From positions 124,001-188,000 of IMG/VR virus record IMGVR_UViG_3300023313_000001: a stretch of DNA of 64,000 nucleotides, one strand, 5' to 3'. Made by a program: the position numbers and the translations under genes. A model generated the notes under the pieces. That model was not told the origin of the DNA and did not search any database. It saw nothing but the letters and a program-made list of their open reading frames with translations. Positions within the stretch are counted from its first letter, which is position 1, and each line of letters opens with the position of its first letter. Below are positions 16,167 to 43,419 of the stretch, one piece after another.

Positions 16167-16700
16167 ATGACCGATAAACCTACAAAAGCTGTGAAAACAG
16201 TTACCCCACGGAAGAAGCGGAAGAAAAAATATCTAAACAACGCAGACTTGTTGATTCAACTAGAATTGAGTAATGAGAAGGGTCGCATGACAGAGCTATT
16301 AGCTCACATGTTATTAACGTTAACCACTAGATATGCAAGTCAGGGGAATTTTGCTGGGTACTCGTACGTAGACGACATGAAAGCATATGCCATGTATATG
16401 ATATGTAGAACGTGGCATCGTTTCGATAAGAATAAAAGCAACAATCCCTTCGCATTTTTCACCCAGTGTATTAAACATTCATTTTATCAATTCCTAAATA
16501 AAGAGAAGCGACAACGTGTTATTCGTGATGAGTTGCTTGTATATTCAGGAATGAATCCGTCAAACACATACATCTCTGATTATGAAGATACTCTAAAAGA
16601 GGCTAAACAACAAGAAAACGTAGACTTGATGGATACTGTAGATATGGTGTCCTCTGTAGTAACAGACATTAATATCCAGTATGATGGAGCCTCAATTTAA
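16167..16700 (+). CDS. gp55: Late-transcription sigma factor, gp55-like
   Basis: YLNNADLL...NFAGYSYVDDMK...FDKNKSNNPFAFFTQCIKHSFYQFLNKEKRQ. Confidence 0.9.
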   Translation: MTDKPTKAVKTVTPRKKRKKKYLNNADLLIQLELSNEKGRMTELLAHMLLTLTTRYASQGNFAGYSYVDDMKAYAMYMICRTWHRFDKNKSNNPFAFFTQCIKHSFYQFLNKEKRQRVIRDELLVYSGMNPSNTYISDYEDTLKEAKQQENVDLMDTVDMVSSVVTDINIQYDGASI

Positions 16701-17775
16701 TATATTGGAGTTACCAGGAGCCATGAAAACAGGATATTTACTAACAGATATTCATTTCGGAAAGAAATCTAACTCAGCTATTCACAACCAGGATTGTATT
16801 GATTACTTATCCTGGTTTTGTGAGCAATTTAGAAATGATCCTAATGCTGATTATGTGGCATTCTTGGGGGATTGGCACGAAAACAGAACAGCTATAGATG
16901 TATCAACGCTAGACTATTCCTACCGCGGAGCTAAGATGCTGAATGATTTAGGGGTTCCAGTGTTTTTCCTCATAGGCAATCACGATTTAGGTACACGTGA
17001 TTCTAGGTCATTATACTCAACAATCCCATTTCACGAATTTAAAAATTTCACATTGGTACATAAGGAGCCTATGGTGGTAGACACCATAGATGGTGGATGT
17101 TTATTTGTACCATTTCTGATGGAAGATGAATATCCATCATTGCACCAATACACAGATGTTCCTGTGTGGATGGGGCATTTCGAGTTCAAAGGATTTGTAT
17201 TGACTGGGTACAATATCACATTAGATTATGGACCTGATATTAAAATGTTTAATAAACAGAAAGATATTTTGTCTGGTCATTTTCACCGACGACAGCAACA
17301 AAAAAACGTGACATATATTGGAAACACGTTCCCTATGGATTTTGGTGATGCTAATTTATTTGAACGAGGATTGACGGTCTACAACCATACTGATAATACT
17401 ATAAAGTTCGTTAATTGGACAGCTTGTCCCAAATATATTAAATGTACATTAAGTGATTTGTTAGATGGTAACCAACTATTGATGAATAATAGTTATGTGT
17501 TTGTGGATGTGGATATTCCAGTTAGTTATGAAGAACTAACTGCTATCGAAACCGTATACAATACGAAATACCAGTTGCGTGAGTTAAAATTAGACGAGTC
17601 ATCTAAATTTGTGGAAAGTTTGTTAGGTGATTCTGCTGAAGATGAAGACGATGATACTGAAGGTAAATCTACTGATGAATTAATTGTAGATATGTTAGGA
17701 CAGGTTGATGATACTAAGTTCGATTCGAATCTATTGATAACCATGTACAACAATGCGAGGATCAAAAATGAGTGA
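16681..17775 (+). CDS. gp47: Recombination endonuclease subunit (Mre11/SbcD-like)
   Basis: Metallophosphoesterase motifs TDIHFG, LGDWHENR, IGNHD, GHFE, SGHFH. Confidence 0.92.
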   Translation: MMEPQFNILELPGAMKTGYLLTDIHFGKKSNSAIHNQDCIDYLSWFCEQFRNDPNADYVAFLGDWHENRTAIDVSTLDYSYRGAKMLNDLGVPVFFLIGNHDLGTRDSRSLYSTIPFHEFKNFTLVHKEPMVVDTIDGGCLFVPFLMEDEYPSLHQYTDVPVWMGHFEFKGFVLTGYNITLDYGPDIKMFNKQKDILSGHFHRRQQQKNVTYIGNTFPMDFGDANLFERGLTVYNHTDNTIKFVNWTACPKYIKCTLSDLLDGNQLLMNNSYVFVDVDIPVSYEELTAIETVYNTKYQLRELKLDESSKFVESLLGDSAEDEDDDTEGKSTDELIVDMLGQVDDTKFDSNLLITMYNNARIKNE

Positions 17776-19708
17776 TGATTTAAAAATCCATAGTTTGTGG
17801 ATGCAGAATTTTATGTCATATGGCAATAAAGTAACGCATGTTCCATTAGATACTAAGGGAATGACCTTAATACGTGGAGTGAATTTAGACGATACAGTTA
17901 ATGGAATTGGTGCAAATGGTACCGGCAAATCGACCATTATTAACGCATTAGTGTATGCATTCTATGGAGAGGCTTTGGGTGATAGTAAGGTTGATGAGTT
18001 GATTAATGATGTCAATAAAAAGAGATGTATAGTTGGAGTTCGGTTTTCAATTGGTAAAACTGAATATTCCATAACCAGATATCGTAAAATGAAATCTGGT
18101 GCAGAGGGGACTTACACTAATATATTCATGAACGAAGATGTGGGGAAGGATGATAATGATAAATCTCGTAAAAATTTAGCTAAAGCTACCTTACTCGAAA
18201 CTAACAAGTTGACTAGAGATTTAGTTGGAATGCCCAAAGAGTTGTTCATTAGATTGGTAGTGTTCGATGCGGATGAGTTGCCTTTCTTGAAAATGAAAGC
18301 AGGTGACCAACGAGAGGTGATGGAACATCTATTCCAATTAACTATACTCTCAGAGAAAGCGGACGTCTTTCGTGAAGATCAACGTGGGACAAAGAAAGAG
18401 ATAGATATTCAAGAAAGTACTATATCAGTTTTAGAGAAACAAGTAGAGAATTATGAAATTCAAATATTAACAGCAAAGAAACGTATGGTTCAGTGGGAAC
18501 AAACTAGGGAGTCTACCTTAAACAATTATGACCTGGATTTGAAGGATTTAGATGATGTAGATATTGACCACGAACGTAAATTATTTGACGCTGTAGAACA
18601 AGCTGAAAAAGCTATTGTGGAGTTAAACACTAAAATCGCTGCTATCAAATTGAAAGCATCTGATTCCAAACATGCAATAGATCAAGCTGATAATGATGTA
18701 ACATTATTAAAATCTAAACACAACACTAAAGAATCGAAAATCAGTAGACTTAAAAGAAATATCACTAGATTGCAAGCAGAAATTGACACCCTAGCAAGTA
18801 ACAAATGTCCTGAGTGTTTACAGCCACTCCCAGATGTTGATGTTAAAATTGCTGAACGACAGTCACTTTTGGTTGATGATCAATCGATGATAGATGCCCT
18901 TATCGTAAAAAATGAAGACATTAATGAAAATATTACACAGTGTATATCCCATAGAGACCAAGCACAAACAACATATGATAATATCATTGCTGGTGTGAGT
19001 AGTTTACTCGATGAAATTAAAACGATAGAATGTGATAAGGTGACTCCTTCTGTTAGATCCAGAGATATATTAAATAAGATTGAATCTAAGAAAGATGCAG
19101 CTAAACTTAAAATATCTGAATTACAAAATGCTGAAAACCCTCACATTGAGGCATTCAATGAATTGAATGAGAAGGATATCGATGTGGTAGATTATGATGA
19201 AATTAACCATCTTAAAAAATTATTAGATCATCAAAAATTTTTATTAAAGTTACTAACTGATAAAAAATCATATATTAGACAGAGATTGGTGAATAAGAGG
19301 CTCCCATATCTTAACGAGAGATTGACAACCTACCTTAACCAACTTGGACTACCATACCAGGTAGAATTCCAAAGCGATTTAACAGCTAAAATCCTACGAA
19401 GGGGTCGAACTAAGAGTTTCAGTAACTTATCCCACGGACAACGAGCAAGAGTAAATTTTGCACTGTCTTTTGCATTCAGAGATGTTATGGAACGTGTACA
19501 TAGGAAGATTAACATATGTATTTTAGATGAGGTGTTAGATAAGGCCTTGTGTGCAGTTGGGGCTAATGCTGCAGTTAATATGATTAGTGAAAAGTGTAAG
19601 AGAGATAACCTCAATATTTTTACAATCACTCATAAAACAGAAATAGCTAATCGATTTGACCAAGTAATGACAGTCACCATGAAGCAAGGATTTTCAGAAA
19701 TATCATGA
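17768..19708 (+). CDS. gp46: Recombination ATPase subunit (Rad50/SbcC-like)
   Basis: QNFMSYGN, Walker A GANGTGKST, coiled coil with CPEC zinc hook, signature LSHGQ, Walker B ILDEVLD; start set to MSDDLK. Confidence 0.92.
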   Translation: MSDDLKIHSLWMQNFMSYGNKVTHVPLDTKGMTLIRGVNLDDTVNGIGANGTGKSTIINALVYAFYGEALGDSKVDELINDVNKKRCIVGVRFSIGKTEYSITRYRKMKSGAEGTYTNIFMNEDVGKDDNDKSRKNLAKATLLETNKLTRDLVGMPKELFIRLVVFDADELPFLKMKAGDQREVMEHLFQLTILSEKADVFREDQRGTKKEIDIQESTISVLEKQVENYEIQILTAKKRMVQWEQTRESTLNNYDLDLKDLDDVDIDHERKLFDAVEQAEKAIVELNTKIAAIKLKASDSKHAIDQADNDVTLLKSKHNTKESKISRLKRNITRLQAEIDTLASNKCPECLQPLPDVDVKIAERQSLLVDDQSMIDALIVKNEDINENITQCISHRDQAQTTYDNIIAGVSSLLDEIKTIECDKVTPSVRSRDILNKIESKKDAAKLKISELQNAENPHIEAFNELNEKDIDVVDYDEINHLKKLLDHQKFLLKLLTDKKSYIRQRLVNKRLPYLNERLTTYLNQLGLPYQVEFQSDLTAKILRRGRTKSFSNLSHGQRARVNFALSFAFRDVMERVHRKINICILDEVLDKALCAVGANAAVNMISEKCKRDNLNIFTITHKTEIANRFDQVMTVTMKQGFSEIS

Positions 19709-21408: not shown

Positions 21409-21541
21409 AAAACGTTCAGGTTTAGCATTATTATTAGTTATAGTGAATACAGCAGCTCTAACTATCCATCCAAATATAGGATCTCTTATTGGGTTAATCA
21501 CCAGTGGAATATTATGCATGGTCAACATGCATACTGAATAA
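21395..21541 (+). CDS. Small predicted membrane protein (48 aa), below the ORF-track cutoff
   Basis: MMQFKKRSGLALLLVIVNTAALTIHPNIGSLIGLITSGILCMVNMHTE: basic N-terminus, two hydrophobic segments, overlaps the upstream stop. Confidence 0.5.
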   Translation: MMQFKKRSGLALLLVIVNTAALTIHPNIGSLIGLITSGILCMVNMHTE

Positions 21542-21568
21542 CCTACTCATCTACTTTCACCAGTATTT

Positions 21569-21600
21569 TCTCATAATAAATATACATTATTATGAGAGGA
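21569..21600 (+). promoter_or_regulatory. Late promoter (AATAAATA 21575-21582) inside an 11-bp hairpin overlapping the resolvase RBS
   Basis: TCTCATAATAA (21569-21579) / TTATTATGAGA (21587-21597); RBS GAGAGGA 21594-21600. Confidence 0.65.
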
Positions 21601-21607
21601 TACATAT

Positions 21608-22123
21608 ATGGCATCTAAAAGTAAGACAAAAGGTAGTGCATTTGAAAATGTTATTGCCAAAATGCTTAACACTGTATATAACACAAAAGAATTTTCCAGG
21701 TGTCCACTAAGTGGAGCATGGATGGGACGATCTAATGCGGCTAAACGATCTGGAGTTAACGCAGCTGCACAAGAGACTCTCAGAGGAGACTTAATCACCC
21801 CAGATAGTTTTCCATTTGTCATTGAATGTAAGTCATACCACGATTCTCCTTCCTATAACGGAATCATTCAGGGTGCAGACCGTATGCTGGATAAGTGGTT
21901 AAAAGAAGTTGAGTTCGATGCAACTCAAGCTAATAAAATGCCGATGTTATGGTTTAAAACTACCCGAAAAGGGACATTTGTGGCATTTCCGAAATTATCG
22001 ATAACAGGTGACTTTTCCGAAGTGTTTGACTATGTTCTGTTGTACAGAAACTACATCATCATTAGTCAACAATCGTTTTGTAACGAATTCTCGAATATTT
22101 CTGAAGGAAAATACACAATTTAA
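21608..22123 (+). CDS. Holliday junction resolvase, PD-(D/E)XK Hjc-like
   Basis: SKTKGSAFENVIAK...FSRCPLSGA...GDLITP...FVIECKSY. Confidence 0.8.
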   Translation: MASKSKTKGSAFENVIAKMLNTVYNTKEFSRCPLSGAWMGRSNAAKRSGVNAAAQETLRGDLITPDSFPFVIECKSYHDSPSYNGIIQGADRMLDKWLKEVEFDATQANKMPMLWFKTTRKGTFVAFPKLSITGDFSEVFDYVLLYRNYIIISQQSFCNEFSNISEGKYTI

Positions 22124-22134
22124 TATATAGTTAG

Positions 22135-22162
22135 TTGACATTACCAAATTACTAGGTGTAAT
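22135..22162 (+). promoter_or_regulatory. Sigma70-type promoter reading into the non-coding element
   Basis: Perfect -35 TTGACA (22135-22140); imperfect -10 TGTAAT (22157-22162). Confidence 0.5.
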
Positions 22163-22165
22163 GTG

Positions 22166-22738
22166 TCGACTCAGAGGGCAGCTGTGGTGCTGAAATCATC
22201 ATGAATGGCAAAGGCTAGACGAAAATCATCTCATATTGAGAGAGCTCTCCCTTCTTCAACGAAGGTGCCATAATTAATTTAATAGATTAATTATAATTAC
22301 AAAAAAGGATAAGTAGATCTACTAGACACCTGATCTATGCCGATCGTTGGGCAAAGCATATTATAATCAACAGGTATGAGAATACTGAAGGTTGCTGTCC
22401 TCATCGAGGTGTGTTTAACAATACACTAACCAAAACGAGTGTCTATAACTATGTACATCAGAAATGAATATCAGAAATGAATAATGGTCAATGTAATGTT
22501 GATCCGGTATGCCCACCCCCGCATCCCGATAGGGGGATAATTAATAATTTTAAATTACTTTTTACTTTCGAAATTGCTTACTAAGTAATTAATAAAAAGT
22601 GAGACAGACCTAGTGCAGTGAGCTTATATAGCGAATGCAGTGAGCTATATAGGTCGCGCACAGGTCTCAAATTGCGGAGTGAAACGCAGCAATTTGTAAT
22701 AGTTGCAATGATAGACATTACGTTGTATACTGAGTTGA
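22166..22738 (+). ncRNA. Putative ~570-nt structured non-coding element (unknown ncRNA and/or replication origin)
   Basis: No credible ORF; terminal stem 22166-22174/22730-22738, long-range stem 22175-22182/22394-22401 and many local hairpins. Confidence 0.55.
22457..22482 (+). repeat. 13-bp tandem direct repeat x2
   Basis: ATCAGAAATGAAT ATCAGAAATGAAT. Confidence 0.85.
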
Positions 22739-22768
22739 AGAACAGATTAAATCTATAAGGTAACTCAA

Positions 22769-23374
22769 ATGAGCATATATGCATTTAGTATTAAAGAAAA
22801 CTCCGAGCAATTTGGATGGAGAATATTCCCATCATATTTTACCCCTGAAGAATGTAAGCAACTGATAACTGACCATTCTAATGAAACGCCCTGGGATGGT
22901 GGAGTAGTTAATCAACCAAATGCAACCACTGATGAAAGCCAGTCTAATGTGCTCAAATCAATTCGTAATGTCACTATCAAGACTGTTACGGTTGAAACAT
23001 GTCCTTGGATATTCGATAAAATGAACTCATTAGTTTGGGGAGTAAATGAAGCCTACCAATTTGAACTGACTGGATTTATGGAAGACATGCAACTGCTCCA
23101 TTACGGAGATGACATAGGTGGTGGGCATTATAAGTGGCATCAAGACTGGGGACCTGCATACCTATCAACTCGCAAGTTAACTATCATTGTACAACTAACA
23201 GATCCCGCTGAGTATGATGGATGTCAAACAGAAGTCAGTTGCAATGGAATAGCTCCTCAAGGAATAGGGGATGTAGTTGTATTCCCATCATTCATGCCAC
23301 ATCGAGTACTTGAATTAACCAAAGGAAATCGAGATGCCCTAGTCGCATGGGTTAATGGGCCTCCATATAAATAG
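22769..23374 (+). CDS. 2OG-Fe(II) oxygenase (prolyl-hydroxylase/PKHD-like)
   Basis: HYKWHQD, RKLTIIVQL, VVVFPSFMPHRV, GNRDALVAW. Confidence 0.88.
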   Translation: MSIYAFSIKENSEQFGWRIFPSYFTPEECKQLITDHSNETPWDGGVVNQPNATTDESQSNVLKSIRNVTIKTVTVETCPWIFDKMNSLVWGVNEAYQFELTGFMEDMQLLHYGDDIGGGHYKWHQDWGPAYLSTRKLTIIVQLTDPAEYDGCQTEVSCNGIAPQGIGDVVVFPSFMPHRVLELTKGNRDALVAWVNGPPYK

Positions 23375-23431
23375 ACTTCATATATACAATGTATTATAAA
23401 TATAACATTGGTAAAAATGGAGAGTCATGGA

Positions 23432-23740
23432 ATGAACTTACAAGATTTATATGAAGGCAGAGAAGATAAAGTATTACAATTAGTACAAACAGAATTATGG
23501 CCAATTATGGATCCATTAAAAATGACCCTTAAAAATGGCCAAACCGTTATGAAACGAGATAAGGATGGATCTATTCTCAAAAAATCCATCGAAAAAGCAA
23601 TAGAAATCATTAAGCAATATAAAGGTGACCATGCTGAACGTCATATAAGAGCTGTTCAAGCTCTTACAGACTACAGAGATGTACAAACCATGTTGACCAA
23701 CGTACTACTTCACGGTGATGGACATGGAGTAGTACGCTAA
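23432..23740 (+). CDS. Hypothetical late protein, possible internal head protein
   Basis: TATAAATA at 23395, RBS GGAG, start MNLQDLYEG. Confidence 0.6.
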   Translation: MNLQDLYEGREDKVLQLVQTELWPIMDPLKMTLKNGQTVMKRDKDGSILKKSIEKAIEIIKQYKGDHAERHIRAVQALTDYRDVQTMLTNVLLHGDGHGVVR

Positions 23741-23758
23741 GTACTCGCTGAAAAATGC

Positions 23759-23947
23759 TCAGTAGACAGGATTGGATCTCTTACCTTCCACAGTAAGTCT
23801 CTCCTCTACAAAATCTCCTATCATCTGCCGTTCTGCATAGGTTCTATTCAACATATCATTATATTGTATTGAACCTCGCATGAAATACACCAACTGGATT
23901 ACGTCTTTGATAATACCACGTACTTCTCCTTGATATCGCTTAAACAT
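23759..23947 (-). CDS. gp51-like hub/tail assembly chaperone C-part, probably made by -1 frameshift from the upstream gene
   Basis: LVYFMRGSIQYNDMLNRTYAERQMIGDFVEERL; frame is open back to the T7 run at 23989-23995. Confidence 0.65.
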   Translation of the reverse strand: MFKRYQGEVRGIIKDVIQLVYFMRGSIQYNDMLNRTYAERQMIGDFVEERLTVEGKRSNPVY

Positions 23948-23982
23948 ATCACGAACATCATCAGGTGTACCATTCTTCAGCG

Positions 23983-24825
23983 TTATGTAAAAAAACTCAT
24001 TGGATTTAATGGAGTGACAATCGTCAGTCTATCCCCACAATCCTTACAATCCTGTCTAAATGTTGTATCAGCTCCCCATACTGTTATCAAATCAATAGTG
24101 TTATTGATTTGGCGTATCTGGGGCAACGGTAATACCTTCACCCAATCGTGGATGAATTCACGGCTATGAATTACTTGCGCTTCGGTATTGCCGTTAGTTT
24201 GAGCTGGTATGACGACTTTCACAATCAGACCGGCCAATTGGGACACCATCTCATTATTTATTTCTTCAGGGGTTAGCTCTCTATCAGGATCTATTGTAGC
24301 CATCATATCGACTACAGCATCATATCTCATTGGTGATATGAACACATGTTTACCATCATCCATTACGCATTTATATTCATTATTCAACCTAGTGGTGTCT
24401 AAGTTTTTAACCTGAGATATGAAAGTGTTAATAGACACATCATATTTGTGCTCCTTCGCTCCTTCACAATTATGTGTGTGAAGCACTGCAACACTATCAC
24501 CGAATGATACACTACGTAAACATATCAACAAATAATCTACATCCTTAGCTAGTAGCCTCATAGGTTTGATTACATCTGGAATACATCTAGCAAATATCTG
24601 TTTAATAGCCTCGCCTGAAAATAACATATCTGGTGTTTTAATTATAATTTCATCTAAGGCTGTCATTGGATATACATGCAATTCTCCGTTCTGAACACTG
24701 GGTGCTAACTCTCCATCATTATAGAACAATCCACTGGATGGTAACTGAAAAGTCTCTCCAGGAATTCTTCCAGACACCAAAAGTGGGTTAACAACACTAC
24801 TTGGTTGTGTGGTATTATCTATCAT
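23983..24825 (-). CDS. gp26-like baseplate hub/tail assembly chaperone
   Basis: FQLPSSGLFY, VYPMTALDEI, DVDYLLICLRSVSFG, C-terminal CKDC...NPMSFF. Confidence 0.78.
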   Translation of the reverse strand: MIDNTTQPSSVVNPLLVSGRIPGETFQLPSSGLFYNDGELAPSVQNGELHVYPMTALDEIIIKTPDMLFSGEAIKQIFARCIPDVIKPMRLLAKDVDYLLICLRSVSFGDSVAVLHTHNCEGAKEHKYDVSINTFISQVKNLDTTRLNNEYKCVMDDGKHVFISPMRYDAVVDMMATIDPDRELTPEEINNEMVSQLAGLIVKVVIPAQTNGNTEAQVIHSREFIHDWVKVLPLPQIRQINNTIDLITVWGADTTFRQDCKDCGDRLTIVTPLNPMSFFT

Positions 24826-24855
24826 TAATATTCTCCATTGTGTGTATTAGTCTAC

Positions 24856-24895
24856 TATTTATGAGGGATTAAACAAAGGACGTCCCTCATAAATA
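24856..24895. promoter_or_regulatory. Back-to-back late promoters forming a perfect 13-bp inverted repeat
   Basis: TATTTATGAGGGA-N14-TCCCTCATAAATA. Confidence 0.75.
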
Positions 24896-24923
24896 CCGAA
24901 TAACTACTCATGGGAATCGTTGG

Positions 24924-27854
24924 ATGACATCACTTACCAAACAAGAAGCTGCATTAATCGCGGATGAAATTAAGAAAGCAATGACTAAATTGCTGGTGAG
25001 TCACCAAACGTTCCTTTCAGATATGTCTAATGAGAGAGGTTCTCGTCGTCCATCCAAAGGTAAGAATGGGGAGTCCTCATCATCTAGTATGAACATCAAT
25101 CGTAGATTGACTGGGTCTATTAAAAATTTAAACTCTGCTGTTGGAAAATCGTCTGATCTGTTTGCATCTCTGAACACGCAGCTCAAACAATCCACAAAGA
25201 ATAGTAAACAGGATAATGTTGTCGGTGGTGCACAACAGCGTAGAGTACAAAAAAACCAACTTAGGTATCTCAAGTTTATGGCTCGTAGTGCCAATGATAC
25301 TAAACACTTATCAGACTCATATTCCAAATCTGCATCATCGGTTGAAAAAAGTGGTAAAAAAGTTAAAGGTGAGCTAACTACTTTTGGACAAGCCCTAGAG
25401 AAGTATGGAACTCAGTTACTATCTAAAGTTGGTGTAGGTAAGGGAGTTGCTACCATATTCTCAGACCTCCAACAGGCTATGTCTACTAGTAACATGTATG
25501 ATGTTGAAGCTACCAATGTAGCAGCGTTGCAAATGGGGATAACTGTAAAAGATTTGATATCACTACAATCATCCTATAGAACTGATGCGTTACGTTCAGC
25601 AGATGGTATTACTGCTTGGACAGAAAATCTTCGTAAATCACAATATGACCTACTAACCTTCACTGGAAATACCAAAGACGCCGCCAAAGCCGCTGCTGCA
25701 ATACGATCTACCGTAATGGATGCAGGTATATCCTTTAAAGAGGCAACTAAAGTAATAGGGTCTGGTAAAGATGGATTAGTTGGACAGTTAAAGAAATTAT
25801 CTAGTGCAACAGGGATGACTATAATGGGCCTCAATGATGGAATGAAATCTATCATATCAGGAGACGAAACTCGTTACATGCTTCAAAAAATGGATAAGAG
25901 TCAACGCGGAAAGTTTTTATCCGACCAGGCTAAATCAGCTCAACAATACACGTTACTTACCGGAAGTTGGGAGAAGGCTAGAGAGTTGGTTATAGCCCAA
26001 CAAAATGAAGGTAAAAAGACGTTCAAAGAACGTTATATTGCAGCAGCAAAACTACAAGCAGCTGCTGTTCGAACTGGGATGGGTGTTGAAGACGCTCAAC
26101 GCATGAGTACGCTCTTTATAAAAAATCCATCACAACGTAATGCTGACGAACAATTGGAGTTGACCAAGCTTCAGAGTAGATTGCACAACAACGTAAGCTT
26201 AATGACGGGAAGTGGGGATGCTCACACAGAGATGATGGGTAACGTTATTATGGACCAATTAGGTGTTAGTGACGTTGGTAACAAAAATTTAACCACATAC
26301 ACTGAGCTTAACCAACAATCTACAGAAAGACACTCTCGTCAAAATATATCAGCTATTATGGATGGTAACTCGTTAGCAAAGTCTACACTCACCATCCAAC
26401 AACAGATTTGGAACACATTAGACAATGGGTTCGTGCAGATGGTTGCTGGATTTGCTGTGCTAGCCCTAAAGGATAAAATAAACCCTCTGGAGCTATTCAG
26501 AAAGAGTGTTGATGGTACCAAAGGCGGATTTATGCGCAATGCTAAAGCAGCTAAACTACGTATGGGTAAGAGACTCGGACGAGTTGGCAAGCTTGCTGGA
26601 CTAGCAGCAGAGGGCGGCACTATTGGTAAAGCACTATTAAAAGGAATTGGTAAAGGAGGAATTGCAGGATTGGCGTCTATGGGGGTCAATGCAGCAGTAG
26701 ATTATGGAATAGACCCACACACCTCTAACCAGGCCACAGCAAAAAATGGGTTAACAGGAGCTATATCTGGAGCAGGATATGGTGCAATGATAGGTTCTGT
26801 AATTCCAGTAATAGGAACTGCTGTGGGAGCTGCTGTAGGAGGAGTTATTGGGGGTATAGTCGGATTATTAGAAGATACTAAAACAGACCGTCAATTTACT
26901 GCTGAAGCTCAACAAGCTGAACTTCATAATAAACTAGCAATATATGATGCTGAGATGACAAACGTTAAAAAACGCCAACAAGCTGAACTAGAGGGAATGT
27001 CTGACATTTTTACTCGTCGTCAAGAAGCAATGGATAATCATGACTACAAAGAAGCAGCCAGACAGCAACTCGAAATTGATAATGTAAGAGAAAGACACTC
27101 AGCTGAAATGGAGTTAATCACCAAACAACGTGCAGCTGCACAAGAATTAAGCTCTATCTATAGTGAAATGTCTAAATCAGAAGGGGACTATAGCAAATTC
27201 CAGGCTGCGTTTGCTGATGCTGACGAAATGAATTGGATTCCGTGGCAGCATCAAATAGACACAGGTGAGTTGAAAGATCAAACTGGAATGGGTGCACAAG
27301 AGCTCCTATCTAAGGTACTCCAACACGGATCCCAACTCAACATAACTGATAAGGAAAAAATGGAAATCAGTGATGCACTATTCTCAGGAGCTGAACTAGA
27401 GGGGGACAGATTCCATGATATATTCACTGCACTCAGAGAAGGTATGAAAAAAGAATATCAGCAATCGAAAACTAAACTAGACGATCGATTACAACAATCT
27501 AGTTCTGCACTTAAGGATGCTAAATCAGCCAAATCCAACTATGACAGAACCCATATTGCCCCATCAACTCCATCCAGGCTTAAGCCAGTGTTAGAAGAAT
27601 TGACGCGCCCTAACAATGCAGAGAACACAAAAAAAATGATCGACGGGTTGACATTAACCCCAGCAGAACGAACTAATGCAGACACCAACAAAGATGGAAA
27701 GTTAGGAGCAGATGAAAAACTGGCTTACATTGCTGATCTATTAGAACGCACACTTAGTGCAAACGAACGAAACTTCACTATTACCCAAGACCAAGCTGAA
27801 AAAGCGTTGGCGATAAGTCGTAAAAATAAAAAACGCGGAATGGTTGCAGAATAA
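24924..27854 (+). CDS. Tape measure protein (976 aa)
   Basis: Long Ala/Gln/Lys-rich helical protein with Gly-rich hydrophobic segment GAGYGAMIGSVIPVIGTAVGAAVGGVIGG; lies between chaperone and portal genes. Confidence 0.7.
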   Translation: MTSLTKQEAALIADEIKKAMTKLLVSHQTFLSDMSNERGSRRPSKGKNGESSSSSMNINRRLTGSIKNLNSAVGKSSDLFASLNTQLKQSTKNSKQDNVVGGAQQRRVQKNQLRYLKFMARSANDTKHLSDSYSKSASSVEKSGKKVKGELTTFGQALEKYGTQLLSKVGVGKGVATIFSDLQQAMSTSNMYDVEATNVAALQMGITVKDLISLQSSYRTDALRSADGITAWTENLRKSQYDLLTFTGNTKDAAKAAAAIRSTVMDAGISFKEATKVIGSGKDGLVGQLKKLSSATGMTIMGLNDGMKSIISGDETRYMLQKMDKSQRGKFLSDQAKSAQQYTLLTGSWEKARELVIAQQNEGKKTFKERYIAAAKLQAAAVRTGMGVEDAQRMSTLFIKNPSQRNADEQLELTKLQSRLHNNVSLMTGSGDAHTEMMGNVIMDQLGVSDVGNKNLTTYTELNQQSTERHSRQNISAIMDGNSLAKSTLTIQQQIWNTLDNGFVQMVAGFAVLALKDKINPLELFRKSVDGTKGGFMRNAKAAKLRMGKRLGRVGKLAGLAAEGGTIGKALLKGIGKGGIAGLASMGVNAAVDYGIDPHTSNQATAKNGLTGAISGAGYGAMIGSVIPVIGTAVGAAVGGVIGGIVGLLEDTKTDRQFTAEAQQAELHNKLAIYDAEMTNVKKRQQAELEGMSDIFTRRQEAMDNHDYKEAARQQLEIDNVRERHSAEMELITKQRAAAQELSSIYSEMSKSEGDYSKFQAAFADADEMNWIPWQHQIDTGELKDQTGMGAQELLSKVLQHGSQLNITDKEKMEISDALFSGAELEGDRFHDIFTALREGMKKEYQQSKTKLDDRLQQSSSALKDAKSAKSNYDRTHIAPSTPSRLKPVLEELTRPNNAENTKKMIDGLTLTPAERTNADTNKDGKLGADEKLAYIADLLERTLSANERNFTITQDQAEKALAISRKNKKRGMVAE

Positions 27855-27879
27855 TGCAAGTAACACCCTACAATGCAAC

Positions 27880-27887
27880 TATAAATA
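27880..27887 (+). promoter_or_regulatory. Late promoter TATAAATA (portal)
   Basis: Exact T4 late consensus upstream of ATG 27921. Confidence 0.75.
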
Positions 27888-27920
27888 CATACACATATAT
27901 TAATTCAATGAGACAAACCT

Positions 27921-29594
27921 ATGCAACCTAAGTGGACAGGATATTTTAAAGTTGTAGAGCCCCAGAGTGACACTGTAAAAGTAACAGATAACATGTCCAC
28001 TGATGCTTCTGCATACAATAACTACAGTTGGTACCAACGATTAGTCCACGGATCATCGTCACGTATATCTAGGTATCAAGAATATGATGTAATGGACCAG
28101 GATGTTGACGTATCTCGTGCACTAGACTTGATATCGGAAGAGATGACCAACCGCAACGCTAAAACTGGACTAGCATTGGATGTTAATTTAACGCTTGAAG
28201 ATGGTCGTCAAGTATCTGACAGCCTAGTTGCCACAATTCGTGTTGCACTCAAACACTGGTGTATTATGCATAAAATGAATATTAAATTATTCGACATTGC
28301 TCGTCACACTATCAAATATGGTGACCTATTTTTTAGAAAAATTGAAGGACAACAAAAATGGGAATATATTAACAGTAAACACGTTATTGCAGCAGTAGTT
28401 GACTCTGAAGATGTTACTAAAATTGTAGCCTATCAGATCCGTAAGGATGTAAAAAAGCCTAGACAGAATGCAGGCGGAAGTGTACCTGTCCACCAAGAAT
28501 ATGAAACTGAAATCGTCCCAGCCCCTGAAGTTGTCAGATTCACCCTAAACGATGATATGTCAGATATGGCTCCATTTGGGGAGTCTGTACTCTCACAAGT
28601 GTATCGTGTACAAAAACAAAAAGAACTACTAGAAGATGCGATTGTAATTTACAGAGTCCAACGAGCCCCAGAGAGACGGGTATTTTACATTGATGTTGGG
28701 AAAATGCCACCACAACGAACTAAACAATATTTAGAAACTATCAAAAACGAAATCCGTCAAAAGAAGGTTCCATCAATTAATGGAGGAACTGCTAACATTG
28801 ACTCCACCTATAATCCTCAAAGTATGTCTGAAGACTTTTACTTCGCTCAACGCCCCAATGGTGCAGGTTCTAGAGTGGAAACACTTCCAGGTGGCCAAAA
28901 TTTGGGAGAGTTATCTGACTTAGAATATTTTAGATCCAAAGTAATGGAAGGTCTTCGAATTCCTCCATCCTATATCCCAAATTTCGAAACCCAAGATTCT
29001 GCTGGGGCATTCAATGATGGTAATGTTGGAACAGCATATATGCAAGAGATCCAATTTTTGAAGTATGTCGATAGATTGCAACAGCATATCAACGAGGTAC
29101 TGGATATAGAGTTCAAACGATTCATGAAGGATTTAGATATCCACATTGATGAAACTATGTATCAAATTAAACTCCCTCAACCTACAAACTTTGAAAAATA
29201 TAAAGAAGCTGCTGTCGATGGTGAGTTACTTACACAATTTGGTAATGCGGATGGTGTAGAATACATGTCCAAACGATTTGTGATGTCGCGATATTTAAAA
29301 CTATCTCCAGATGAGATTGCTACCAACGAAATGTTGTTACGACAGGAGCGTGGAATGGATCCCCAAGACGGAAAAGCCTTGGTTAAATTATATAATCCTG
29401 ATCTCATGGATATGGAGGCTCCTGAGGAACCTGACTCCCCTGGGGGTGGCTTTGGTGGGGGTGGTGGCTTTGGTGACGGTGGGCTGGATGATGATATGGA
29501 TGACGATGAACCCGCTGACGATACTAGTGCAATAACAGATAAAGCATCTGAGGATACTACACCAACAGATACAAAAGACGCCAATACACCATAA
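27921..29594 (+). CDS. gp20: Portal protein
   Basis: LLEDAIVIYRVQRAPERRVFYIDVGKMP; EDFYFAQR...VETLPGGQNLGELSDLEYF. Confidence 0.95.
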   Translation: MQPKWTGYFKVVEPQSDTVKVTDNMSTDASAYNNYSWYQRLVHGSSSRISRYQEYDVMDQDVDVSRALDLISEEMTNRNAKTGLALDVNLTLEDGRQVSDSLVATIRVALKHWCIMHKMNIKLFDIARHTIKYGDLFFRKIEGQQKWEYINSKHVIAAVVDSEDVTKIVAYQIRKDVKKPRQNAGGSVPVHQEYETEIVPAPEVVRFTLNDDMSDMAPFGESVLSQVYRVQKQKELLEDAIVIYRVQRAPERRVFYIDVGKMPPQRTKQYLETIKNEIRQKKVPSINGGTANIDSTYNPQSMSEDFYFAQRPNGAGSRVETLPGGQNLGELSDLEYFRSKVMEGLRIPPSYIPNFETQDSAGAFNDGNVGTAYMQEIQFLKYVDRLQQHINEVLDIEFKRFMKDLDIHIDETMYQIKLPQPTNFEKYKEAAVDGELLTQFGNADGVEYMSKRFVMSRYLKLSPDEIATNEMLLRQERGMDPQDGKALVKLYNPDLMDMEAPEEPDSPGGGFGGGGGFGDGGLDDDMDDDEPADDTSAITDKASEDTTPTDTKDANTP

Positions 29595-39969: not shown

Positions 39970-41517
39970 ATGGCCAAAAATAGATTCAATATTAACCAAA
40001 CCGACTTTGCATGTAAGTCATGGCAGTTAACAAAAGCTAACGATATTGGTATCATTGATCAATATGGTGGTGAAGCCTTAGCTATTGGTGGTGCAGATTT
40101 AAATATATTTAAGTTACTCGGCGTGCATGAACAAGGTAAACTAGTTGATCTGACTGGAAATGGGGTTCCCATATCTGGTGGCACCGCTGGGGGATACACT
40201 GCATCGAACGCATTTATATCATCCACCTGTAACAATATATGGCGCTCATCCCAACAAGGACTCAATGATATAATAACAAATGCATACATTGGATATAATT
40301 TTGGAACTCCAAAATTGGACAATGGTAGAACTAGATATGGTGTGGATGTAGATATAAAAGAACACATTACCACTATCAAAATCCAACAAAGCTCCAACCC
40401 AGCGCGTCGTGTAACCTCTGCTAGAGTTGAACGGTCTGATGATGGCATAACTTGGCTTGGTGTTGCAATTGTATCTATTCCCGATGATGAACATCTAAAC
40501 CAAATCAGTTTCAAACAATCTGCAGCAACTAGGTATTGGAGACTTCGACCACTATCCTTTACTGGGACAGACGCAGATTTCTGGGAAATTATCACTCTGG
40601 AGTTAATCGATTGGGATGAAACAAACCTATTTCAGGTACAAGACGACTACGGATGGATAGAAAATAGAGATCGTGACTACGCAGATAAATCCATAACCAT
40701 TAAGGGGTTTTATGACCTGTATGAAAAGGAATCAGATCTGACACAATGGGGATTTGGAGCAACTGGCAGTTTGTATTACATGACTGTCAATTTTAATGAT
40801 GTGGTGAACAGAATTGGACGCCCTTTAGTTATAGGGGATATAATGGAAGTGCCCAGTGAGGCAATGTTTGACCCAAATATGACATCTATACAAAAATATC
40901 TCGAGGTCACTGATGTAAGTTGGTCGGCAGAAGGGTATGCGCCAGGGTGGCAACCAACTTTGCTACGAGTAATTGCTGAACCTATGTTAGCTAAACAAGA
41001 AACTCAGGATATAATAGGACACATGGCAGGAGCGATCGACCAAAGTGGACTATTGGAAATCGACCAGTCTAAATATTCCGAATTAGCAACTAACCAAAGT
41101 GAGCGAGCTAGAGAAAAGGCTGAACAAGAGGTACCACTACGTGGTGGAGATTCATCTGGACTAACATCATTTGAACAAGATGAAATAGCTCATTACCAAG
41201 ACTCCAATATAAACATTTCTAAAATAAGTGTTAACCAAAAAGGGCTATACGTTGAAGATGGCATCCCTAAAAACGGCGACTCCTATACTGAAGGGAACGA
41301 CTTCCCCCCAACTCCCAGTGACGGAGATTATCATAGACTAACATACAATGGGTTAGCGGAAGGAATGCCACCACGATTACATAGATTCTCTATTAAAAAA
41401 GGACGTTGGATATTCCTAGAAGCAGATAGGCGTGTCGAGTATGACCCCCAAAAACCTTCTTTACAAACTCTAAAAAATAGTAGAGATGCGATTTCAATGA
41501 AAAATTTGGGTAAATAA
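39970..41517 (+). CDS. gp14: Head-closure neck protein gp14-like with inserted discoidin-like domain
   Basis: GGADLNIFKLLGVHEQG, ENRDRDY, DLTQWG, RIGRPLVIGDIME, VSWSAEGY.PGW.PTL; late promoter CATAAATA 39932. Confidence 0.72.
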   Translation: MAKNRFNINQTDFACKSWQLTKANDIGIIDQYGGEALAIGGADLNIFKLLGVHEQGKLVDLTGNGVPISGGTAGGYTASNAFISSTCNNIWRSSQQGLNDIITNAYIGYNFGTPKLDNGRTRYGVDVDIKEHITTIKIQQSSNPARRVTSARVERSDDGITWLGVAIVSIPDDEHLNQISFKQSAATRYWRLRPLSFTGTDADFWEIITLELIDWDETNLFQVQDDYGWIENRDRDYADKSITIKGFYDLYEKESDLTQWGFGATGSLYYMTVNFNDVVNRIGRPLVIGDIMEVPSEAMFDPNMTSIQKYLEVTDVSWSAEGYAPGWQPTLLRVIAEPMLAKQETQDIIGHMAGAIDQSGLLEIDQSKYSELATNQSERAREKAEQEVPLRGGDSSGLTSFEQDEIAHYQDSNINISKISVNQKGLYVEDGIPKNGDSYTEGNDFPPTPSDGDYHRLTYNGLAEGMPPRLHRFSIKKGRWIFLEADRRVEYDPQKPSLQTLKNSRDAISMKNLGK

Positions 41518-41518
41518 T

Positions 41519-42649
41519 ATGGTACATCGTAATAGGTTTATTACTAAATCTACAAAGGTGCACAATCACAAATATGATTATTCATTTGTTGAGTACAAAA
41601 ACACCCACACTCACGTAACCATCGTGTGTCCAAAACACGGAAAATTTTCCCAACTACCCATGTGTCATGTGAGAGGTGAAGGGTGTGCCCAATGTTTTGG
41701 TAACACTAGAAAAACCACAGAAGAGTTTATACATACAGCCTCTCAAATTCACAAGGGAAGGTATGACTATTCGTTGGTAGAGTATATAAATGTTAAAACT
41801 AAAGTTGACATTATTTGCAAACACCATGGGGTATTTAAACAGTCGCCAGACCACCATATTAATAAAAAAGGTGGGTGTGCTAAATGTGCGGGTAATGTTG
41901 TTAAAACTACCCCCGAATTTATATCAAAAGCCTTAAAAATCCACGGAGCTGCATACGATTATTCTGAAGTTACATACATCAATAGTAAAACACCTGTGCG
42001 GTTGAAATGCTCTAAGCATGGGATATTTACAATCACACCAGAGCAACATATACTCAAACATGGTGGATGTGGCAAATGTTCACCCACATTTCCCAGCAAT
42101 ACTACTAACTTTATTCAACGTGCCACAAACGTACATAATCACAAATATGATTATTCATTAGTTGAGTATAAAAATATCGACACTCCAATAACTATAATCT
42201 GTCCAAAACACGGAAAATTTACAACATCTCCCAAAATACATTTAAGAGGATCTCAATGTAAACAATGTTATTTAGATCAGAAAGTAGGATCATATACTGT
42301 AGATAGATTTAGATGCGATCCTGCGTTAGCTCAATCATCAGGATATGTATATGCAGTGGAGTTAACAGATTTGTCGTCCACTAAATTTATCAAGATTGGT
42401 ATATCCACCAACTATAAAAAACGCATCAATCAATACGTTAAAATGAACCCAAATGTATTACATTTACATAAATCCACTTTAAAAGATGTTTTTGGTACTG
42501 AACAACAACTATTGCAATTGTTGGCAAATGAAAAATATGATCCCCAAAACAGTTTTGGTGGACATACTGAGTGTGTCCAGTACAATGATTATACTATAAA
42601 TACTATAAACTCAACATTTAACAACCTGGTGGAACGATGTCAAACATAG
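41519..42649 (+). CDS. Free-standing GIY-YIG (T5orf172-like) endonuclease with four Cys/His repeats
   Basis: 4x H..(K/R/A)YDYS.V.Y.N..T.V...C.(K/H)HG.F...P..H....C..C; GYVYAVEL...FIKIGISTNYKKR. Confidence 0.78.
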   Translation: MVHRNRFITKSTKVHNHKYDYSFVEYKNTHTHVTIVCPKHGKFSQLPMCHVRGEGCAQCFGNTRKTTEEFIHTASQIHKGRYDYSLVEYINVKTKVDIICKHHGVFKQSPDHHINKKGGCAKCAGNVVKTTPEFISKALKIHGAAYDYSEVTYINSKTPVRLKCSKHGIFTITPEQHILKHGGCGKCSPTFPSNTTNFIQRATNVHNHKYDYSLVEYKNIDTPITIICPKHGKFTTSPKIHLRGSQCKQCYLDQKVGSYTVDRFRCDPALAQSSGYVYAVELTDLSSTKFIKIGISTNYKKRINQYVKMNPNVLHLHKSTLKDVFGTEQQLLQLLANEKYDPQNSFGGHTECVQYNDYTINTINSTFNNLVERCQT

Positions 42650-43419
42650 AAACGTACTTTTATGATGAACAGTTTAAACGATATGCTCTACAGTTTAACG
42701 CAATCTTCAGTGGATTGCAAGTAATGGTTGGCAAATCAGCAACTTCAGATGAAAAATTAATTTCAGTACCGATCATCTATGGGTCGCAAGATCGAGTAGC
42801 ATCGGCCGCAGCCCATGGACACACTCAAAACAAACACCTGAGAGTTCCCATGATGTCGTCTAACTTGGTTAATTTTGATATAGCTAATGATAGAATGAAA
42901 GGCACTGGTGCTACAAAACGTGAAGTATTTGTTCCATTGGGTGGAGTTCTTCCAAATGATGCCAAAGTAGTTCGTACCCGTATGGCAGTTCCGTACGATT
43001 TAACGTTCGATTTAAGCATATACACCAGCAATAAAGATCAGCAATTTCAGATACTGGAACAGATACTAGTGTTGTTTGATCCTATTCTCCAAATTCAAAC
43101 ATCAGAAGCACACTTAGATCCCACTAAAATATCAACTGTTGAAATTATCAGTATTAACCCAGAAGAATCATTTCCACCTGGAACTGAATCACGTGTAATT
43201 GTTACTACAATACAGTTTAAAATAGACGCATACATCACCATCCCAGCCACAGTTAAAACTGACGTTGTACAACAGATATACGCCCGCATATCCACTATAT
43301 CAGATGCTCACGTAGGCATAGTCCAATCAGATGGTACTGCAAACGCGGATATCCCTGCGTTGTATGATGAGTTAGGAATTGAACCAACCATAATTGCCAC
43401 TGCATTTATTGATAACTAA
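42637..43419 (+). CDS. gp15: Tail terminator/sheath stabiliser
   Basis: YFYDEQFKRY, VPIIYG, VPYDLTFDLSIYTSNKDQQFQILEQILVLFDP. Confidence 0.88.
   Translation: MSNIETYFYDEQFKRYALQFNAIFSGLQVMVGKSATSDEKLISVPIIYGSQDRVASAAAHGHTQNKHLRVPMMSSNLVNFDIANDRMKGTGATKREVFVPLGGVLPNDAKVVRTRMAVPYDLTFDLSIYTSNKDQQFQILEQILVLFDPILQIQTSEAHLDPTKISTVEIISINPEESFPPGTESRVIVTTIQFKIDAYITIPATVKTDVVQQIYARISTISDAHVGIVQSDGTANADIPALYDELGIEPTIIATAFIDN

What the first reader, a model, noticed from the sequence alone, without database searches (positions are those of the whole stretch)
22530..22725. 3' part carries DNA-style GNA-triloop hairpins and lies near an apparent GC-skew switch: candidate replication origin or terminus
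Seen: after a very AT-rich tract (22538-22600) come TATATAGC-GA-AT-GCA-GT-GA-GCTATATA (22625-51) and AAATTGC-GGA-GT-GAA-AC-GCA-GCAATTT (22669-95), with TGCAGTGAGCT repeated (22614-24, 22636-46). Established: GNA triloops, tandem sheared G.A pairs and GGA-type zippers are especially stable in ssDNA, and T4 and ColE1 start replication from transcript R-loops. Hand counts in 60-nt lines of plus-strand genes give G/C 14/4 (18001) and 18/4 (19501) on the left versus 12/12 (23041), 12/14 (28021) and 8/15 (36481) on the right. Most genes also point away from the 16-23 kb area. Inference: the transcript forms an R-loop and the displaced + strand folds into priming signals. Caveats: few lines were sampled, and under usual bacterial polarity this switch would mark a terminus.
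Basis: partly seen in the sequence, partly recalled or inferred. Interest (0 to 1): 0.7.

Follow-up and report, generated by a model that had tools for sequence, protein, structure and literature searches.

The report
Conserved GA/GNA hairpins ending phage RNA
The hairpins are real and conserved: they form the tail of a previously undescribed, about 530-base structured non-coding RNA locus of uncultivated T4-like jumbo phages, which sits within a few kb of a genuine strand-composition switch, but whether they work as RNA or as single-stranded DNA in replication is not settled.

Summary
Observation confirmed and extended. They lie in a 645-nt gene-free gap (22124-22768) of a T4-like jumbo-phage record of 229.5 kb. 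Thirteen relatives from independent assemblies keep this gap. Each has 1-2 hairpins whose apex is 5'-GA, 1-5 pairs, GNA triloop, 1-5 pairs, GA-3'. In 12 copies the apex reads GAAYGNAGUGA, with 9 of 11 bases invariant, while the stems covary. The strict motif occurs once in the whole record.

Upstream on the same strand are a conserved sigma-70-type promoter, a covarying multi-helix domain, and a hairpin plus G-run module. No Rfam family matches.

The skew claim also holds, but only at third codon positions. The plus-strand-referred GC3 skew is positive on the left and negative on the right for genes of both orientations. The cumulative maximum is at 22,000. That polarity marks a terminus, not an origin.

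My reading is that the hairpins are the 3' module of a new early ncRNA (about 0.55). A DNA-level role as an R-loop origin or priming signal stays open (about 0.2). Neither transcription nor replication could be tested directly.

The parts
22134..22163 (+). Sigma-70-type promoter of the non-coding transcript: TTGACA (22134-39), 18-nt spacer, TAATGT (22158-63). The inferred start is near 22168-22171.
   Evidence: Sequence. The same arrangement is seen in relatives: L036 has TTGACA-N18-TATGAT, and L038, L039 and L043 have TTGACT-N17-CATTAT. The start site is inferred, not mapped.
22174..22353 (+). 5' domain helices: P1 (22174-79 with 22244-49), P2 (22184-89 with 22197-202), P4 (22250-54 with 22261-65), P5 (22266-69 with 22350-53).
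   Evidence: RNAalifold on 7 relatives gives 41 pairs, 14 of them with compensatory double changes. These sequence blocks occur only in the 7-8 'core family' relatives.
22354..22504 (+). Variable middle region. It holds the conserved UGCUGUCC block (about 22393-22400), a candidate long-range partner of the G-run, and the small hairpin P7 (22489-22501).
   Evidence: The pairing of this block with the G-run is predicted, with one-sided changes only.
22505..22536 (+). P8 hairpin (22505-12 with 22521-28), with the C-rich loop CCACCCCC, followed by AUA and the G-run (TAGGGGG, 22530-36). This is a probable H-type pseudoknot, and with the tail hairpins it is the most widely conserved module.
   Evidence: Alignment of 12 relatives. 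P8 has 3 pairs with double changes and a G.U at its third pair in 9 of 12. Loop-to-G-run pairing is 83%, with C-G, U.G and U-A all seen at one pair.
22538..22604 (+). A+T-rich linker (85.7% A+T over 22538-22600) that contains a predicted hairpin (about 22560-22604, inner stem 22572-22590).
   Evidence: The 60 nt after the G-run are 63-90% A+T in 12 of 13 relatives, against 59-68% for their loci. A hairpin of different sequence sits there in most relatives.
22606..22667 (+). Tail hairpin 1, a long imperfect stem. Its top is GCTTATATAGC / GCTATATAGGT (22622-22654) and its apex is GAATGCAGTGA (22633-22643): G.A and A.G tandem, A-U, U.G, then a GCA triloop. The direct repeat TGCAGTGAGCT (22614-24, 22636-46) lies in it.
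   Evidence: The covariance model of the motif scores it 29.2 bits; it is one of the 12 hairpins the model was built from, so that match is by construction, but no other strong match occurs elsewhere in the window. The apex is shared with 11 hairpins of relatives.
22668..22696 (+). Tail hairpin 2: CAAATTGC / GCAATTTG stem with apex GGAGT-GAA-ACGCA (a GAA triloop closed by U-A, then G-C, A.G, G-C, G.A). This is a variant of the motif in which the two G.A pairs are separated by a G-C pair.
   Evidence: It is related to the GAG(U)-GNA-(A)CGA apices of L038 hairpin 1 and L167.
22703..22731 (+). Promoter-like site TTGCAA-N17-TATACT for the downstream 2OG-Fe(II) oxygenase gene (22769-23374).
   Evidence: Consensus scan. 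-10-like TATACT or TATAAT elements lie at the same place in L036, L038 and L039. This is a consensus match only.
21775..27995 (.). Interval holding the switch of + strand-referred third-codon-position GC skew, from positive on the left to negative on the right. The cumulative maximum is at 22,000.

Best explanation
The two hairpins are the 3' module of a previously undescribed structured non-coding RNA of about 530 nt. Host RNA polymerase transcribes it rightwards from a conserved early-type sigma-70 promoter at 22134-63.

The RNA has four parts: a multi-helix 5' domain; a compact hairpin whose C-rich loop can pair with the following G-run; an A/U-rich linker with a small hairpin; and then one or two long hairpins. 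Each long hairpin is capped by tandem G.A/A.G pairs, a 1-5 bp helix and a GNA triloop.

The cap sequence is held almost constant while every stem pair drifts with compensation. I therefore infer that the cap is a sequence-specific docking site for a protein, or for another part of the RNA. I also infer that the long stems fix and protect the 3' end of the RNA, or separate it from the downstream message.

Shown: the locus, its non-coding nature, its conservation, the covariation, the strand specificity and the promoter motif. Inferred: that it is transcribed, where it ends, and what binds the cap.

The nearby strand-composition switch is real. I take it to mark where replication forks usually converge in this phage, and to be near the RNA locus through conserved gene order rather than through function.
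For: - The gap is non-coding. Every one of the six frames has at least 11 stops, of all three kinds, and indels among relatives are not in threes.
- All relatives found through the flanking PDDEXK gene keep a 470-1000 nt gene-free gap, except the most distant one.
- RNAalifold finds 14 of 41 pairs with compensatory changes.
- P8 has double changes and a conserved G.U pair.
- The tail-hairpin stems covary while the 11-nt apex is fixed.
- The + strand folds better than the - strand: z = -6.15 against -3.6 for the whole gap, and for the tail.
- G.U pairs occur next to the tandem G.A (L038, L039), and a U.G closes the window's triloop.
- A promoter is conserved in position and orientation.
- The motif is unique in the 229.5-kb record, so it is not a general terminator or repeat.
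- The RNA form of the tail is more stable than the DNA form, at -39.9 against -23.9 kcal/mol.
Against: - No transcript evidence exists. No listed RNA run holds the locus, and three small metatranscriptomes of the same study gave no contig on it.
- Every hairpin apex I read in the tails carries a GNA triloop, mostly closed by C-G. This cap is known above all from single-stranded DNA signals (G4 origin, RSF1010 ssiA, N4 promoters; PMC13037366, PMC4496689). Some members of the 5' domain use typical RNA tetraloops instead (CUUCGG in L041, CGAAAG in L036).
- No U-tract terminator follows the hairpins in most relatives.
- Proximity to a replication-type skew switch (2-lnL interval about 6 kb, out of 229 kb) would be a coincidence under this reading.
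- No partner for the cap is identified.
Confidence: 0.55

Rival explanations
1. Replication origin of the R-loop type. The early transcript forms a persistent hybrid in the A+T-rich tract after the G-run. The displaced + strand folds into GNA/G.A mini-hairpins that resist SSB and recruit primase or helicase. The structured 5' RNA plays the part that RNA II folding plays in ColE1.
For: - The layout is an early promoter, a long structured RNA, a conserved G-run and an A+T-rich tract, kept in 12 of 13 relatives.
- The hairpins are specific to the + strand, which is the strand an R-loop would displace.
- C-GNA-G caps are the ones documented at the G4 origin, at RSF1010 ssiA (bound by RepB' primase) and at N4 promoters (PMC13037366, PMC4496689).
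- T4 oriF and oriG consist of a promoter plus an A+T-rich unwinding element. oriE depends on an early promoter, and several T4 origins lie at shifts of strand composition and near late-gene regions (PMC3016281).
- The motif is single-copy in the record, and a strand-asymmetry switch lies within about 0-5 kb.
Against: - The skew polarity is that of a terminus. A fork primed by this RNA runs rightwards and should make the + strand G-rich on the right, but it is C-rich there.
- T4 R-loop origins need no specific RNA structure (PMC3016281). Here about 400 nt of helices covary.
- The RNA copy of the hairpins is more stable than the DNA copy.
- G.U or G.T pairs sit in and next to the cap.
- Both hairpins lie on one strand only.
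- No iterons or initiator gene were noticed in the gap or its flanking genes.
Confidence: 0.2
2. A cis-acting leader or boundary element of the downstream message. The hairpins act in the same transcript as the 2OG-Fe(II) oxygenase gene, as a processing site (RNase III-type long stems), an attenuator or an antitermination signal at the early/late gene boundary.
For: - The hairpins sit directly upstream of the next gene and its promoter-like site.
- The stems reach 17-27 bp in relatives (L043, L040, L169), which is the size of RNase III substrates.
- The locus lies between early-type genes (gp55, gp47, gp46, nucleotide enzymes) and structural genes.
Against: - In L167 and L168 the module precedes different, unrelated small genes.
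- The downstream gene has its own promoter-like element after the hairpins.
- A fixed 11-nt cap is not needed for RNase III.
- The large 5' domain is unexplained by this reading.
Confidence: 0.1
3. A DNA site acting where forks converge or where recombination occurs. The long palindromes extrude as cruciforms or hairpins. They are then handled by the structure-specific nucleases encoded just upstream, the PDDEXK 'resolvase-like' protein and gp46/gp47 (SbcCD-like).
For: - The skew polarity marks a convergence point near here.
- The PDDEXK_15 gene is adjacent, and the gp47 and gp46 genes lie 2.4-5.4 kb upstream.
- Long near-perfect inverted repeats occur in several relatives.
Against: - The conserved features (GNA loop, G.A pairs, G.U pairs) exist on one strand only, and a cruciform would need both.
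- Adjacency to PDDEXK is partly an artefact of how the relatives were found.
- No known terminus system looks like this.
Confidence: 0.07

Closest known systems
T4 oriF/oriG (and oriE) R-loop origins
   Same: A promoter reading into an A+T-rich tract. Location near a shift of strand composition and next to late genes. Dependence on an early promoter, as described for oriE (PMC3016281).
   Different: T4 origins are about 100 bp, need no conserved RNA fold or hairpins, and have no sequence motif in common. Here a covarying RNA of about 400 nt and fixed hairpin caps are present, and the skew polarity is opposite to that expected for an origin.
ColE1 RNA II pre-primer
   Same: About 550 nt of structured transcript running into the putative initiation region. 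A G-run is important for hybrid formation in ColE1 (my own knowledge, not tested here).
   Different: No sequence or Rfam similarity. No antisense RNA I-type partner is evident. It sits in a phage, not a plasmid, and function is untested.
DNA mini-hairpins GCGNAGC at single-strand initiation signals (G4 origin, RSF1010 ssiA) and N4 virion-polymerase promoters
   Same: A GNA triloop closed by C-G, with a sheared G.A in the loop. Strand-specific. Recognised by primase or polymerase in those systems (PMC13037366, PMC4496689).
   Different: Those hairpins have short stems and no tandem G.A below the loop. N4 promoters occur several times per genome, whereas this motif is single-copy. Here the hairpins continue an RNA structure and contain wobble pairs.
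Large ornate phage-associated non-coding RNAs (ROOL, GOLLD)
   Same: Several hundred nucleotides, many covarying helices, carried by phages, function unknown (PMC12286853).
   Different: No match to their Rfam models. A different host group (T4-like jumbo phages from mats and other metagenomes). The GA/GNA-capped tail has no counterpart that I know of.
K-turn / K-loop (box C/D-type) tandem G.A motifs
   Same: 5'-GA/GA-3' tandem pairs followed by a short helix and a loop. The non-canonical stem GAAC/GUGA resembles GAUG/CUGA.
   Different: The defining 3-nt bulge before the G.A pairs is absent in nearly all copies. No L7Ae-type protein was looked for systematically.

Membership tests
Any Rfam 15 RNA family | Match to a curated covariance model | tested here: not met
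   No hit at gathering score in the 64-kb window. Only noise (E > 5) in 22050-22850. No hit in the gaps of 7 relatives at E <= 0.05.
T4-type R-loop origin | [quoted passage not shown] | tested here: met
   TTGACA-N18-TAATGT at 22134-63, and an 86% A+T tract at 22538-22600. However, the tract lies about 370 nt from the promoter, not adjacent as in oriF.
T4-type R-loop origin | Persistent RNA-DNA hybrid and initiation of DNA synthesis at the site | not testable with these tools
   This needs infected cells. Only assembler contigs of one DNA run were available, and their depth was flat at 183-407.
Replication origin, by compositional criterion | Cumulative GC skew minimum (+ strand C-rich on the left, G-rich on the right) | tested here: not met
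   The opposite is found. GC3 skew is +0.075/+0.102 on the left and -0.118/-0.236 on the right, with a cumulative maximum at 22,000.
Replication terminus, by compositional criterion | Cumulative GC skew maximum, independent of gene orientation | tested here: met
   Caveats: the record is about 65% complete, the switch coincides with the early/late gene boundary, and 4-fold-degenerate sites give a plateau from -4 to 24 kb rather than a peak.
DNA mini-hairpin (GCGNAGC type) | GNA triloop closed by a C-G pair on a G-C pair | tested here: inconclusive
   C-GNA-G is present in 11 of 12 type-A caps. The next pair is A-T, not G-C, and the window copy is closed by T.G. Stability as DNA was not measured.
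K-turn | 3-nt bulge between a canonical stem and the tandem G.A stem | tested here: not met
   The outer stem abuts the G.A pairs directly in 10 of 12 copies.
Intrinsic terminator | G+C-rich hairpin followed at once by a U-run | tested here: not met
   No terminator-like site in 21500-23500. Among relatives, only L044 hairpin 2 is followed by a U-run.

The most novel reading that the evidence does not exclude
A clade of uncultivated T4-like jumbo phages carries a ColE1-like, RNA-programmed replication element. In this reading a folded early RNA, a G-run and an A+T-rich tract set up an R-loop. Conserved GA/GNA mini-hairpins on the displaced strand then serve as a primase or helicase entry site. 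This would be the first sequence-defined, structure-defined origin module shared across T4-like phages.
Probability: 0.15. Interest if true: 0.85.

Novelty: categorically new. Interest (0 to 1): 0.62.

Why it matters
If the locus is an RNA, it adds a new large structured RNA class to the few known from phages (ROOL, GOLLD). It also brings an unusual, sharply conserved hairpin cap that should make a binding partner easy to fish out.

If the hairpins act as DNA, they would give T4-like phages their first conserved origin-type signal. T4 origins share no motif (PMC3016281).

Either way, the analysis shows that this jumbo phage has an orientation-independent strand asymmetry with a defined switch point. 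This implies fixed fork directions rather than purely random recombination-primed replication.

Tried and rejected
- **Known RNA family.** Rejected.
- **tRNA or tmRNA in the window.** None.
- **Hidden protein gene or stop-codon recoding in the gap.** Rejected.
- **Genome-wide hairpin type (terminator, REP-like element, N4-type promoter).** Rejected, because the motif is single-copy.
- **Partner RNA of the phage's Ro60 protein.** Unlikely. Y-RNA-like hits lie next to that gene, 100 kb away.
- **Hammerhead core or K-turn.** Read by eye against the consensus; neither fits.
- **Assembly chimera as the cause of the skew switch.** Rejected. Independent assemblies keep the same gene order across the site.
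- **Gene class alone as the cause of the skew switch.** Rejected as the sole cause. Both orientations switch sign. An early-type helicase and a homing endonuclease on the right are negative, and + strand tail-fibre genes on the left are near zero. Gene class still adds to the signal.

Searches that led nowhere:
- GenBank phages by DNA.
- IMG/VR by flanking proteins and by two patterns. All 137 pattern loci (120 + 17) were chance matches.
- The metagenome pattern scan gave one true relative among 77 hits.
- RNA runs.
- Literature search for the cap sequence.
- The skew contrast within +/-4 kb in relatives is weak, at +0.021 against -0.053, because the flanks are too short.

Full report
**Context.** The window is bases 124,001-188,000 of a 229.5-kb linear IMG/VR virus record that CheckV rates about 65% complete. 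A microbial-mat DNA run holds it. The genes around the finding are T4-like:
- late sigma factor gp55, then gp47 and gp46 (SbcD/SbcC-like), at 16167-19708;
- a nucleoside deoxyribosyltransferase-like gene and a 5' nucleotidase;
- a PDDEXK_15 nuclease at 21608-22123;
- a 645-nt gap;
- a 2OG-Fe(II) oxygenase at 22769-23374;
- a baseplate hub on the - strand, then portal and adaptor genes.

The nearest cultured phages are jumbo myoviruses (RsoM2USA, PA5oct) at about 31% identity in gp46. GenBank phages hold no DNA match.

**The observation.**
- The stretch 22598-22700 folds into a 62-nt hairpin (22606-22667) and a 29-nt hairpin (22668-22696).
- The z-scores are -6.4 (DNA parameters) and -4.7 (RNA) on the + strand, against -3.9 on the - strand.
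- The apex of the first hairpin is GAATGCAGTGA. This forms a G.A and A.G tandem, then A-T, then T.G, then a GCA triloop.

**The gap is a conserved non-coding locus.**
- All six frames carry at least 11 stops of all three kinds.
- Homologues of the PDDEXK protein at 50-73% identity led to contigs from independent assemblies.
- Twelve of these, plus one from a metagenome pattern scan, keep a gene-free gap of 470-1000 nt at the same place.
- Indels among them are not in threes.

**Upstream RNA structure.**
- A sigma-70-type promoter is conserved in position and direction. It reads TTGACA-N18-TAATGT in the window, TTGACA-N18-TATGAT in L036, and TTGACT-N17-CATTAT in L038, L039 and L043.
- RNAalifold on seven relatives predicts 41 pairs, 14 of them with compensatory double changes. 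Helices P1, P2, P4 and P8 are especially well supported.
- The whole gap folds with z = -6.15 on the + strand and -3.6 on the - strand.
- The 5' domain blocks are shared by only 7-8 'core' relatives.
- Five more distant relatives (L040, L044, L167, L168, L169) keep only the 3' module. That module is hairpin P8 with a C-rich loop, the sequence UCGWUAG followed by a G-run, a linker, and the capped hairpins.
- P8 has three pairs with double changes and a G.U at its third pair in 9 of 12 sequences. Loop-to-G-run pairing holds in 83% of cells.

**The hairpin cap.**
- Folding the tails of all 13 relatives shows one or two hairpins each with the same architecture. A long ordinary stem is followed by 5'-GA...GA-3' tandem mismatches, then 1-5 Watson-Crick pairs, then a GNA triloop (GAA, GCA, GGA or GUA).
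- Twelve copies read GAAYGNAGUGA, with nine invariant bases.
- Their outer stems show double changes at six of six positions. None of 500 shuffles reaches the observed score, and slid registers collapse to 28-41% pairing.
- Variants are GAG(U)-GNA-(A)CGA (window hairpin 2, L038, L167) and doubled GAAUGA...GAAUGA forms (L039, L041, L044, L045).
- The strict motif occurs once in the 229.5-kb record (0-2 in shuffles) and 3 times in 1.9 Mb of unrelated loci.
- A covariance model finds no other strong copy in the window, and the whole locus is single-copy.
- No Rfam family matches the window or seven relatives. The cap sequence appears in no relevant paper.

**The skew.**
- Raw cumulative GC skew does not inflect at 22-23 kb.
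- Third-codon positions referred to the + strand tell a different story. Left of record 146 kb the skew is +0.075 +/- 0.010 for 138 + genes and +0.102 +/- 0.016 for 32 - genes. Right of it, it is -0.118 +/- 0.012 for 73 + genes and -0.236 +/- 0.028 for 18 - genes.
- The sign therefore follows position, not gene orientation, which is the signature of replication-type asymmetry.
- The cumulative curve peaks at window 22,000. A two-segment model gains 124 lnL, with its best break at 27,302 and a 2-lnL interval of 21,775-27,995.
- Gene class adds to the signal. Late structural genes are about 0.1-0.2 more C-rich at third positions than early genes.
- Gene class cannot explain the signal alone. An early-type helicase and a homing endonuclease on the right are negative. 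Plus-strand tail-fibre genes on the left are near zero. The - strand baseplate hub at 23983-24825 has the sign expected for the right arm.
- Independent assemblies share the gene order across the site, so a chimera is excluded.
- The polarity is that of converging forks. About 30% of huge phages show such bidirectional patterns (PMC7162821).
- The record is incomplete, so the partner switch is not seen.

**Weighing RNA against DNA.**

For RNA:
- continuity with about 400 nt of covarying structure on the same strand, downstream of a conserved promoter;
- wobble pairs in and beside the cap;
- a conserved G.U in P8;
- greater stability of the RNA form of the hairpins.

For DNA:
- every hairpin apex I read in the tails carries a GNA triloop, mostly C-G-closed, which is the hallmark of DNA mini-hairpins at the G4 origin, RSF1010 ssiA and N4 promoters (PMC13037366, PMC4496689);
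- some 5' domain members use RNA-typical UUCG and GAAA loops instead;
- the G-run followed by an A+T-rich tract resembles a promoter-plus-unwinding-element origin (PMC3016281);
- the site is single-copy and close to the asymmetry switch.

Against an origin specifically:
- a fork primed by this transcript would run rightwards and should leave the + strand G-rich on the right, which is the opposite of what is seen.

I could not obtain transcript or replication evidence. No listed RNA run holds the locus, and the only DNA run is kept as contigs with flat depth.

**Verdict.** There is a conserved, strand-specific hairpin signal next to a real strand-asymmetry switch. However, the polarity is that of a terminus, and the simplest reading of the hairpins is as the tail of a new early structured RNA. 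I put about 0.55 on the RNA module, 0.2 on an R-loop or ssDNA origin element, 0.1 on a leader or processing role, and 0.07 on a DNA site for structure-specific nucleases.

Noticed in passing
Outside the window: record 41,461-43,388 (L285 7462-9389): The phage encodes a Ro60-like protein (TROVE plus vWA domains). Two sub-threshold YrlA (Y RNA-like) hits lie directly upstream of it (32.9 and 27.5 bits; gathering score 69).
   Followed up: partly
Outside the window: record about 50,450-51,025 (L285 16455-17025), and L285 2534-3369: A phage-borne permuted tmRNA (114.6 bits; tag peptide ANDNFFATAIAA), together with tRNA-Cys, tRNA-Lys and tRNA-Met genes.
   Followed up: no
window 43416-45173 (-), 49505-51181 (-); record 72,889-74,577 (-), 106,922-108,814 (+), 197,849-199,519 (+): At least five paralogous HNH homing endonuclease genes of about 560-630 aa (phrog_3339) are scattered on both strands.
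   Followed up: partly
L036 1-1957, L037 1-1957 and L040 452-3517: The gp46/SbcC homologues of these relatives are 1011-1021 aa and carry a LAGLIDADG_3 hit, which looks like an intein-type insert. The window copy (17753-19708) is 651 aa without it.
   Followed up: no
L041 4281-4640, L045 4502-4890, L225 (same gap, upstream of the ncRNA promoter): Four to five tandem hairpins share the conserved loop GGUGUGACAGC. This is a second, different repeated hairpin motif, absent from the window.
   Followed up: no
L042 (ends at 5221) and L044 (ends at 4972): Two relatives' contigs break off inside the non-coding gap. This may reflect assembly trouble at the long palindromes or local diversity.
   Followed up: no
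Outside the window: record 224,732-225,994 (-): A 420-aa gene with no family match has an extreme coding-strand third-position GC skew of +0.62.
   Followed up: no
window 22614-22624 and 22636-22646: The exact 11-nt direct repeat TGCAGTGAGCT is peculiar to the window. One copy is the 3' half of the cap and the other lies in the 5' arm of the long stem, as if the cap had been partly duplicated.
   Followed up: partly
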